Below are positions 4,340-5,110 of a DNA stretch of 64,000 bases, piece by piece. Where the stretch lies: the NCBI GenBank assembly GCA_002189035.1, contig CM007989.1:1364001-1428000 (forward strand), in the 5' to 3' direction. The notes under the pieces were generated by a model that did not search any database, was not told the origin of the DNA, and saw only the letters and a list, made by a program, of their open reading frames with translations. Position numbers and translations under genes: made by a program. Within the stretch, counting starts at the first letter, position 1, and the number at the start of each line of letters is the position of its first letter. Source of the stretch: Utricularia gibba. Its lineage: Eukaryota > Plantae > Magnoliophyta.

Positions 4340-5110
4340 ATGGATCCTAATCACACTGGAGATTTGCTCAAGTACGCTTTTTTGATTAAGGGTTGAGTAT
4401 ATGGTTTGTAAAATTGGGTGATTTGATGATTTTGCTTCAGGCATTTGGAGAAACAGAACGAGCTTCTTATGGATGCTTATAGGTCAATGTCGCATGAGTT
4501 GCGCAAACTCCAGGTCTGATTGATTTCTATTTTCAATCAAGTTTTGACGTCTGTATCGTATATACTTTTCTTGTTGATTGTGTTCGAGGAGTAGATAGAC
4601 AGGTGTAAAAAGCATGGGTTTTTTTATGAACATTTTTGCTGCTGTATTTCGAGTTCTTTGCGGTATTAATTTGGTTCGCGAATCCAATAATGTGCTGAAG
4701 TTCTACCTTATTTCTGTTCCAACTTTGTAGGTTGAGGAAGAAATACTCATGCGGAAATTCTACGAGTTTATGGCTTCCCAGGGTTTAGTTGAGAAGGTAT
4801 TTCTTCGTCAAAAATTCAACTATTTACTAGTTTCGGCCTCGGAAGAATGCCACAGAAATTCGACAGCATCCTCTTTTTTGGCTAGTATTATCCTGTTTCC
4901 AGTGCCTATCGGGGAGTAATTCTGTTGTCTTTTTATTGCAACCTTCTTGATACGCGCTCTCCCTGGATGCATTGGGTATGAGATCCTTTCTGGAACTATG
5001 CGTTGACCACCATTTTTTTTTTTTTTTTGCAGAAGAAAAATAGTGCAAAAACATCAGAGAATGAAAACGATCCAAGTGAAGAATTAGGTGTTTCTGCAAA
5101 GCAGCACTAG
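4340..5110 (+). CDS. 82-aa small coiled-coil protein, 4 exons, absent from the ORF track; candidate SNAPC5/SNAP19-like
   Basis: Exons 4340-4371, 4441-4513, 4731-4796, 5033-5110, all GT-AG, total 249 nt with no internal stop: MDPNHTGDLLKHLEKQNELLMDAYRSMSHELRKLQVEEEILMRKFYEFMASQGLVEKKKNSAKTSENENDPSEELGVSAKQH*. Confidence refers to the gene model; function is unproven. Confidence 0.85.

What the first reader, a model, noticed from the sequence alone, without database searches (positions are those of the whole stretch)
4340..5110. Unannotated 82-aa four-exon protein resembling SNAPC5/SNAP19: a possible plant SNAPc subunit
Seen: a clean GT-AG gene model missed by the ORF track, with an amphipathic helix LKHLEKQNELLMDAYRSMSHELRKLQVEEEILMRKF followed by an acidic/polar tail. 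It aligns without gaps over 29 residues to human SNAPC5 as I recall it (LQELRKEEETLLRLKAALHDQLNRLKVEE): 10 identities including the L..L.VEE end, with similar protein size and acidic tail. Established: SNAP19 is a small helical assembly subunit of SNAPc that binds SNAP190/SNAP43 for snRNA-type promoters; plant SNAP50, SNAP43 and SNAP190 homologs are known. I do not know of a characterised plant SNAP19. Coiled-coil heptads can give false similarity, so this is a hypothesis.
Basis: partly seen in the sequence, partly recalled or inferred. Interest (0 to 1): 0.7.

Follow-up and report, generated by a model that had tools for sequence, protein, structure and literature searches.

The report
Candidate plant SNAP19 (SNAPC5) gene
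A small, spliced and expressed gene that this genome's annotation appears to lack encodes an 82-residue single-helix protein conserved across seed plants; its best, but below-threshold, family match is SNAP19/SNAPC5, a subunit of the snRNA transcription factor SNAPc that flowering plants are said not to have.

Summary
The four-exon GT-AG model (4340-4371, 4441-4513, 4731-4796, 5033-5110, + strand) is carried, with its introns removed, by assembled contigs of four runs from three studies.

The gene is not an orphan. At least 129 database proteins, all named "uncharacterized" or "hypothetical", match it. They come from eudicots, magnoliids and Nelumbo (median 86 aa), plus a 174-aa spruce protein. 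The Sesamum orthologue has the same exon boundaries and the same downstream neighbour.

AlphaFold2 on an orthologue gives one helix (residues 3-51) and a disordered acidic tail. This is the layout of human SNAPC5.

The SNAPC5 reading is partly supported:
- **For:** A published table lists a moss PF15497 protein and leaves the angiosperm cells blank.
- **Against:** every score (10-22 bits) is below Pfam's cut-off of 23.6. The plant profile does not retrieve human SNAPC5 from the PDB. Unrelated helical proteins score similarly.

The joined 82-aa translation was never built or searched, and no SNAPC5 family alignment could be obtained. I put SNAPC5 homology at about 0.55.

The parts
4253..4339 (+). 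Minimal 5' leader of the mRNA. It contains a 16-codon upstream ORF, ATG 4264 to stop 4312-4314, out of frame with the main ORF.
   Evidence: The contig of run X2 starts at 4253 and runs without a break into exon 1. The uORF was read from the sequence. The true transcription start is unknown.
4340..4371 (+). Coding exon 1: Met1 to the first two bases of Lys11 (MDPNHTGDLL + AA).
   Evidence: Joint 4371>4441 is seen in four runs. tblastn of orthologues P0004, P0012, P0002 and P0019 covers it.
4372..4440 (+). Intron 1: 69 nt, GT..AG, with in-frame stops.
4441..4513 (+). Coding exon 2: last base of Lys11, then 24 residues forming the N-terminal half of the long helix. It differs from the family consensus at one residue (Arg for His).
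4514..4730 (+). Intron 2: 217 nt, GT..AG, phase 0, between Gln35 and Val36. The same position is used in Sesamum and in the plant contigs found in metagenomes.
4731..4796 (+). Coding exon 3: 22 residues (VEEE... to ...GLVEK), the C-terminal half of the helix.
   Evidence: It is 72-77% identical to the Lamiales and Cornus orthologues tested (P0004, P0012, P0002, P0019).
4797..5032 (+). Intron 3: 236 nt, GT..AG, with a poly-T tract before the acceptor.
   Evidence: In one search the contigs go from 4796 to 5043 with ten record letters that fit 5033-5042. The tool skipped 5002-5042 as a repeat, so this joint is inferred from record coordinates and is not listed as a joint.
5033..5110 (+). Coding exon 4: 25 residues of polar/acidic tail and TAG.
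   Evidence: Across orthologues the tail is poorly conserved (mean top-residue frequency 0.45; D+E 22%, K+R 7%).
5111..5312 (+). 3' untranslated region, at least this long. It overlaps the 3' end of the convergent GH17/X8 gene.
   Evidence: Contigs run on to 5244, 5313, 5332 and >=5400.

Best explanation
This is the orthologue, in a Lamiales plant (other notes of this scan say Utricularia gibba), of a small seed-plant gene. Its product is one roughly 50-residue alpha-helix followed by a short, disordered acidic tail. The most likely role is the plant counterpart of SNAP19/SNAPC5. In that role its helix would pack against helices of the SNAP43 (SNAPc1) middle region and the SNAP190 (SNAPc4) N-terminus. 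That would complete the four-helix 'wing-2' bundle, which in the human Pol II snRNA pre-initiation complex stabilises SNAPc and touches TFIIB. Shown here: the gene is real, spliced, expressed, conserved and helical. Inferred: homology to SNAPC5. Not tested: any association with SNAPc.
For: Expression and splicing. Conservation: a profile of two window exon stretches, kept as separate rows, finds 48 plant proteins at E down to 2e-14 against 5.8 billion sequences. A profile of orthologues finds 346 at E<=10, of which 120 are listed, all at E<=5e-31. The spruce orthologue B8LK88 is 174 aa. Sesamum has the same four coding exons and the same convergent GH17+X8 neighbour. Residues 10-51 are about 90% conserved on all seven heptad phases, as expected for a helix enclosed by several partners rather than a simple dimeric coiled coil. 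AF2 gives a helix at 3-51 with pLDDT 89-99 and a disordered tail. Human SNAPC5 contributes residues 1-51 as one helix of wing-2 (10.1101/2022.09.21.508861). Pfam SNAPC5 is the commonest hit, in a constant N-terminus-to-N-terminus register. hhalign of the plant profile against the human 29-mer finds the same register, P 7e-4. A position-specific score of the human 29-mer on the plant profile is 48 at that register. It is at most 22 at the other 31 start registers tabulated. It beats full shuffles (z 6.1) and shuffles that keep the hydrophobic pattern (p 0.013). The ESM Atlas places a Streptophyta cluster with PF15497 in 28% of members third among neighbours by features, after two unnamed Streptophyta clusters. 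Supplementary Table 1 of 10.1101/2020.06.29.177642 lists a PF15497 homologue in Physcomitrella, Drosophila and Anopheles and leaves Vitis, Arabidopsis, maize and rice blank. A land-plant SNAPC5 therefore exists, and the angiosperm slot is vacant.
Against: No member reaches Pfam's gathering score, and the more distant spruce protein scores lower (10-11 bits), not higher. Human SNAPC5 (7zwc_d) is not listed at E<=10 by the plant profile or by a single plant sequence. The best PDB hit is an unrelated H. pylori helical protein at E 0.004-0.03, which shows the noise level for this kind of sequence. Several generic coiled-coil Pfam families score within a few bits of SNAPC5. The hhalign probability is only 27%. 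The plant sequences are 50-90% identical to each other, so the many Pfam hits are not independent tests. No true profile-profile comparison with a SNAPC5 family alignment could be run. The moss protein listed was not compared with this family.
Confidence: 0.55

Rival explanations
1. It is a conserved seed-plant helical subunit or adaptor of some other complex. The resemblance to SNAPC5 is then convergence: amphipathic-helix composition plus similar size.
For: All SNAPC5 scores are below the curated cut-off. Coiled-coil families (KASH_CCD, APG6_N, Macoilin, ZapB, UPF0242) and the H. pylori protein HP0062 reach comparable scores. Human SNAPC5 is not retrieved from the PDB. With the hydrophobic pattern held fixed, the residual similarity is only p 0.013 over 29 residues. 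Reviews state that plant SNAPc has three subunits (PMC10533338; PMC9652321).
Against: SNAPC5 is four to ten times more frequent than any other family among members at E<=0.01 (31 of 83, against 7, 5, 3, 2 or 1). It aligns start to start with a whole-protein family of the same size and layout. No other family claims these proteins. The statements of a three-subunit plant complex rest on failed homology searches, not on purified plant complexes that I could find.
Confidence: 0.38
2. It is a free-standing small regulatory protein (a microProtein-like helix) that titrates a coiled-coil partner and has no stable complex of its own.
For: It is very small, has a single helix and no other domain.
Against: Near-invariance on all helix faces across eudicots and magnoliids is more typical of an obligate, enclosed subunit. 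No larger plant protein carrying a related helix was seen among the listed hits. The hits up to 184 aa were not examined individually.
Confidence: 0.05
3. It is not a real protein-coding gene: a spliced non-coding transcript with a chance ORF.
For: None beyond its small size.
Against: The ORF is conserved at protein level from spruce to asterids, with conserved intron positions. Conservation is concentrated in the helix, and the tail is variable but remains open.
Confidence: 0.02

Closest known systems
Human SNAPC5 / SNAP19 (UniProt O75971; PDB 7zwc chain d; Pfam PF15497)
   Same: Similar size (82 against 98 aa). One N-terminal helix of about 50 residues followed by an acidic, disordered tail. 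Ungapped alignment of plant residues 10-38 to human 5-33 with 10 identities, including the L..L.VEE end. PF15497 is the best-supported family hit for the plant orthologues.
   Different: Scores stay below Pfam's cut-off and human SNAPC5 is not retrieved by plant profiles. No evidence of binding to SNAP190 or SNAP43. The plant helix is far more conserved within plants than it is similar to the animal one.
Physcomitrella PF15497 protein listed as SNAPc5 in Supplementary Table 1 of Girbig et al. (10.1101/2020.06.29.177642)
   Same: It is a land-plant protein that the Pfam model, iterated by its curators, does accept as SNAPC5. It may be the moss orthologue of this family.
   Different: Its sequence could not be fetched here, so orthology to the seed-plant family is untested. 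The same table found nothing in Vitis, Arabidopsis, maize or rice.
Generic short coiled-coil families (e.g. Pfam KASH_CCD, APG6_N, ZapB; PDB 2gts HP0062)
   Same: Comparable HMMER scores (14-20 bits) to the plant helix.
   Different: These are local pieces of longer or unrelated proteins. Their hits are less frequent among members, have no start-to-start register, and have no biological link to a plant nuclear protein.

Membership tests
SNAPC5 / SNAP19 (Pfam PF15497) | Sequence match to the family model at or above its curated gathering score (23.6 bits) | tested here: not met
   131 full-length orthologues in two alignments were scanned, and five spruce-cluster proteins besides. The best E is 2.2e-4 (about 22 bits), typical scores are 16-21 bits and spruce gives 10-11 bits. 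Window exon pieces give no listing at E<=10. The joined window protein was not scanned.
SNAPC5 / SNAP19 (Pfam PF15497) | Remote homology by profile-profile comparison with a SNAPC5 family alignment | tested here: inconclusive
   Only the human 29-mer quoted in the finding was available as the SNAPC5 side. hhalign gave probability 27%, P 7e-4, in the expected register. The PSSM shuffle tests gave z 6.1 and p 0.013. No SNAPC5 multiple alignment could be obtained with the tools.
SNAPC5 / SNAP19 (Pfam PF15497) | Architecture: a small protein with one long N-terminal helix (human residues 1-51) and an acidic tail | tested here: met
   AF2 of orthologue P0019 gives a helix at 3-51 with pLDDT 89-99 and a disordered 60-82. 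Tails have D+E 22% against K+R 7%.
SNAPC5 / SNAP19 (Pfam PF15497) | Forms the wing-2 helical bundle with the SNAP190 N-terminus and the SNAP43 middle region, and co-purifies with SNAPc | not testable with these tools
   No multimer prediction is available and the plant SNAPc1/SNAPc4 sequences were not to hand. No plant SNAPc proteomics was found in the paper library.
Conserved seed-plant 'uncharacterized protein' family (e.g. Sesamum LOC105177808, Populus POPTR_009G004400, Picea B8LK88) | Collinear protein match to the window's exons, with the same intron positions and gene neighbourhood | tested here: met
   tblastn gives E about 1e-13 for exons 1-2 and about 1e-8 for exon 3, at a single locus. 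The same exon boundaries are found in Sesamum. The exon 2 | exon 3 junction (KLQ | VEEE) is also the same in the plant contigs from metagenomes. A convergent GH17+X8 gene lies downstream in both the window and Sesamum.

The most novel reading that the evidence does not exclude
Seed plants, flowering plants included, keep a fourth SNAPc subunit orthologous to animal SNAP19. If so, the wing-2 bundle and its TFIIB contact predate the plant-animal split, and the textbook 'three-subunit plant SNAPc' is an artefact of failed homology searches on an 80-residue helix.
Probability: 0.5. Interest if true: 0.65.

Novelty: new member of a known kind. Interest (0 to 1): 0.5.

Why it matters
Plant reviews state that plant SNAPc has only the three core subunits (PMC10533338). 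A structural paper on human SNAPc calls SNAP19 non-conserved (PMC9652321). In humans, SNAP19 helps hold SNAP190 and SNAP43 together and lies in the bundle that touches TFIIB. A conserved plant candidate gives a concrete and cheap test of whether this part of the snRNA initiation machinery is ancient. The test would be co-IP or proximity labelling with SRD2/SNAPc4, a multimer prediction, and a knockout with snRNA read-out. It also names a function for a family annotated only as 'uncharacterized' in every hit listed here, from dozens of plant genera. If the reading is wrong, the family is still a strikingly conserved 9-kDa helix that needs a partner.

Tried and rejected
1. Pfam on single exon translations gave nothing. 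The pieces are too short to be informative.

2. PDB sequence search with the exon pieces gave only noise.

3. A word search with the 62-aa open stretch that contains exon 3 found no candidate.

4. The single exhaustive phmmer job, run on the 30-aa start of that stretch, found 0 hits. In hindsight that job would have been better kept for a family profile.

5. What worked was an alignment (A1) with two rows, each an unchanged open stretch of the window given by reference (exon 2 and exon 3, not joined). It was used as the query of the word search.

6. A profile search with orthologues listed only the best 120 of 346 hits. More distant members were therefore not seen, including any from Brassicaceae, legumes, Solanaceae or monocots.

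7. Plant profiles and a single plant sequence against the PDB do not list SNAPC5.

8. Foldseek of the single-helix model against the PDB found nothing usable, as expected.

9. A resemblance to BBLN/UPF0184 recalled from memory found no support in any scan. UPF0184 appears in no Pfam output, and the helix position differs.

10. Thiedig et al. 2021 on Arabidopsis SNAPc4 is not held in the library.

11. An exon 2 against human 29-mer shuffle test gave p 0.016. It was superseded by the family PSSM test.

Full report
**The gene model**

The four coding exons are 4340-4371, 4441-4513, 4731-4796 and 5033-5110 on the + strand. The three introns are GT..AG, of 69, 217 and 236 nt. The product is 82 codons plus TAG.

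Each holds a quarter or less of the sampled words of 4000-5400, which is what a spliced transcript would hold. Laying four of them gave one contig per run. Each contig skips exactly 4372-4440 and 4514-4730. Each then passes from 4796 to 5043 with ten record letters in between. Those letters fit 5033-5042, the exon part of the stretch that the tool skipped as a T-rich repeat. Contigs without the introns can only come from spliced RNA, so the model is transcribed and spliced as predicted. The longest 5' reach is 4253. On the 3' side the contigs run to at least 5244-5400.

**Constraints on the searches**

I never built or submitted the joined 82-aa sequence, in a tool or in a script.

Exon pieces alone gave nothing in Pfam or in the PDB. 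The 62-aa open stretch that starts with exon 3 found no candidate in the word search. Its first 30 residues found nothing in the exhaustive search.

I then aligned two unchanged window stretches as separate rows (A1: 4731-4916 and 4430-4516) and used that alignment as the query. This let words from exon 2 recruit candidates of full-protein length. It returned 48 plant proteins at E down to 2e-14 against 5.8 billion sequences.

**The family**

All 48 hits are angiosperm proteins of 59-109 aa, and those that carry a source name are called uncharacterized or hypothetical, apart from a few automatic misnomers. None has a precomputed Pfam domain. Their alignment is almost invariant over residues 1-57 and variable afterwards.

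The window's exon 2 differs from the consensus at one residue. Exon 3 is 72-77% identical to the Lamiales and Cornus orthologues tested.

A profile of 36 orthologues found 346 proteins at E<=10. Only the best 120 were listed, all at E<=5e-31. They are eudicots of many orders, Nelumbo, Magnolia and Asimina.

A scan of JGI metagenome contigs found 19 plant loci. Eighteen are genomic, and in all of them exon 2 ends with ...KLQ and exon 3 starts with VEEE.... One, L002, is a spliced transcript with a 130-aa ORF that is 47% identical. Its 90% cluster contains Picea sitchensis B8LK88, 174 aa. The family therefore reaches conifers.

In Sesamum indicum the annotated orthologue has the same four coding exons. 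It is followed by a convergent GH17+X8 gene, exactly as in the window, where the ORF 5400-6533 (-) hits Glyco_hydro_17 and X8. The best hits are Lamiales. This fits other agents' unchecked notes that the genome is Utricularia gibba.

**What the protein looks like**

AlphaFold2 on orthologue P0019 with an 83-row alignment gives a single helix at residues 3-51 (pLDDT 89-99) and a disordered 60-82. Foldseek finds nothing for a lone helix.

Conservation over residues 10-51 averages 0.90 and is high on all seven heptad phases (0.81-0.99). The tail averages 0.45 and is acidic and polar. A helix conserved on every face is more likely to be enclosed by several partners than to be a plain dimeric coiled coil. 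This is an inference.

**Test of the SNAPC5 idea**

On its own it hits Pfam PF15497 at 37.6 bits.

Evidence in favour:
- Full-length plant orthologues hit PF15497 more often than any other family. The counts are 35 of 48 at E<=10 and 31 of 83 at E<=0.01, against 7 for the next family.
- The best E is 2.2e-4, and the register is always plant residue 10 to profile position 5.
- hhalign of the plant profile against the human 29-mer finds the same register (P 7e-4, probability 27%).
- A position-specific score of the 29-mer on the plant profile is 48 at that register. It is at most 22 at the other 31 start registers tabulated. It exceeds full shuffles (z 6.1) and shuffles that keep the hydrophobic pattern (p 0.013).
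- The ESM Atlas lists the family's own two Streptophyta clusters first. Next comes a Streptophyta cluster in which 28% of members carry PF15497 (score 0.88, a lead only).

Evidence against:
- No plant member reaches the gathering score of 23.6 bits.
- The spruce proteins score only 10-11 bits.
- Neither the plant profiles nor a single plant sequence lists human SNAPC5 in the PDB at E<=10.
- The top PDB hit is the unrelated H. pylori protein HP0062 at E 0.004-0.03.
- Several coiled-coil Pfam families lie within a few bits of SNAPC5.
- The plant sequences are close relatives of each other, so the many hits are effectively one observation.

**Literature**

Reviews and structural papers say plants have only SNAP190, SNAP50 and SNAP43 homologues, and that SNAP19 is not conserved (PMC9652321; PMC10533338). 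I found no paper on a plant SNAP19.

In the human Pol II snRNA pre-initiation complex, SNAPC5 residues 1-51 form one helix of the four-helix wing-2 bundle. The other helices come from SNAPC1 (162-234) and SNAPC4 (81-125), and the bundle contacts TFIIB (10.1101/2022.09.21.508861; 10.1101/2024.09.10.612236).

Girbig et al. state that the Pfam SNAPc19 family was iterated to include remote homologues. Their Supplementary Table 1 lists a SNAPc5 entry for Physcomitrella, Drosophila and Anopheles, and leaves Vitis, Arabidopsis, maize and rice blank. A land-plant PF15497 member is thus already on record, and the angiosperm position is empty. A conserved angiosperm family of the right size and layout, whose best family hit is PF15497, is the obvious candidate to fill it. 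I could not fetch the moss protein to test this link.

**Verdict**

The gene is a real, expressed member of a conserved seed-plant family.

SNAPC5 is the best available assignment, at about 0.55. Formal family membership by Pfam's cut-off was tested and not met. Complex membership is untested.

The main rival, at about 0.38, is an unrelated helical subunit whose similarity to SNAPC5 is convergent.

I class the finding as a candidate new member of a known kind and score interest at 0.5. It contradicts a repeated statement in plant reviews and is directly testable. Against that, the statistics are borderline and Pfam's curators had already found a moss member.

Noticed in passing
window 4264-4314 (+): A 16-codon upstream ORF (ATG 4264, TAA 4312-4314) lies in the 5' leader, out of frame with the main ORF. 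It is inside the transcript only if transcription starts at or before 4253, which is where the contig of run X2 begins.
   Followed up: no
window 5111-5405: The 3' ends of this gene and of the convergent GH17/X8 gene overlap, and assembled contigs merge the two. One contig (X3) skips 5333-5404, which reads CT..AC on the + strand. That is a minus-strand GT..AG intron, so the glucanase-like protein does not end at the stop codon at 5400-5402. Another contig (X2) skips 5313-5395, which is GT..AG on the + strand, then runs on for about 1.1 kb beyond the joint (contig length 1,657 against 539 letters laid). Only 255 of those letters were reported and I did not place them. That could be a spliced long 3' UTR isoform or an assembly chimera.
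   Followed up: partly
window 3077-3379 (-): An exon upstream, on the opposite strand, encodes part of a Rad21/Rec8-type kleisin N-terminus (PF04825, 26 bits). That gene and the small helix gene appear to be divergently transcribed from a shared region of a few hundred bases.
   Followed up: no
literature, not in the window: Supplementary Table 1 of 10.1101/2020.06.29.177642 lists PF15497 (SNAPc5) homologues in Drosophila melanogaster and Anopheles gambiae. Other papers describe fly SNAPc as a three-subunit complex.
   Followed up: no
L006, L007, L011, L013-L019 (metagenome contigs): Plant genomic contigs from JGI metagenomes carry a more divergent version of exons 2 and 3 (for example RHIDRQNEVLMEAYRSMFHEL...), with the same intron position. 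The host plants were not identified. They may be monocots.
   Followed up: partly
P0027, P0081, P0086, P0107 (database names): A few orthologues carry misleading automatic names (Knotted1, vesicular transport factor p115-like, single-minded homolog 1). These presumably come from coiled-coil similarity.
   Followed up: no
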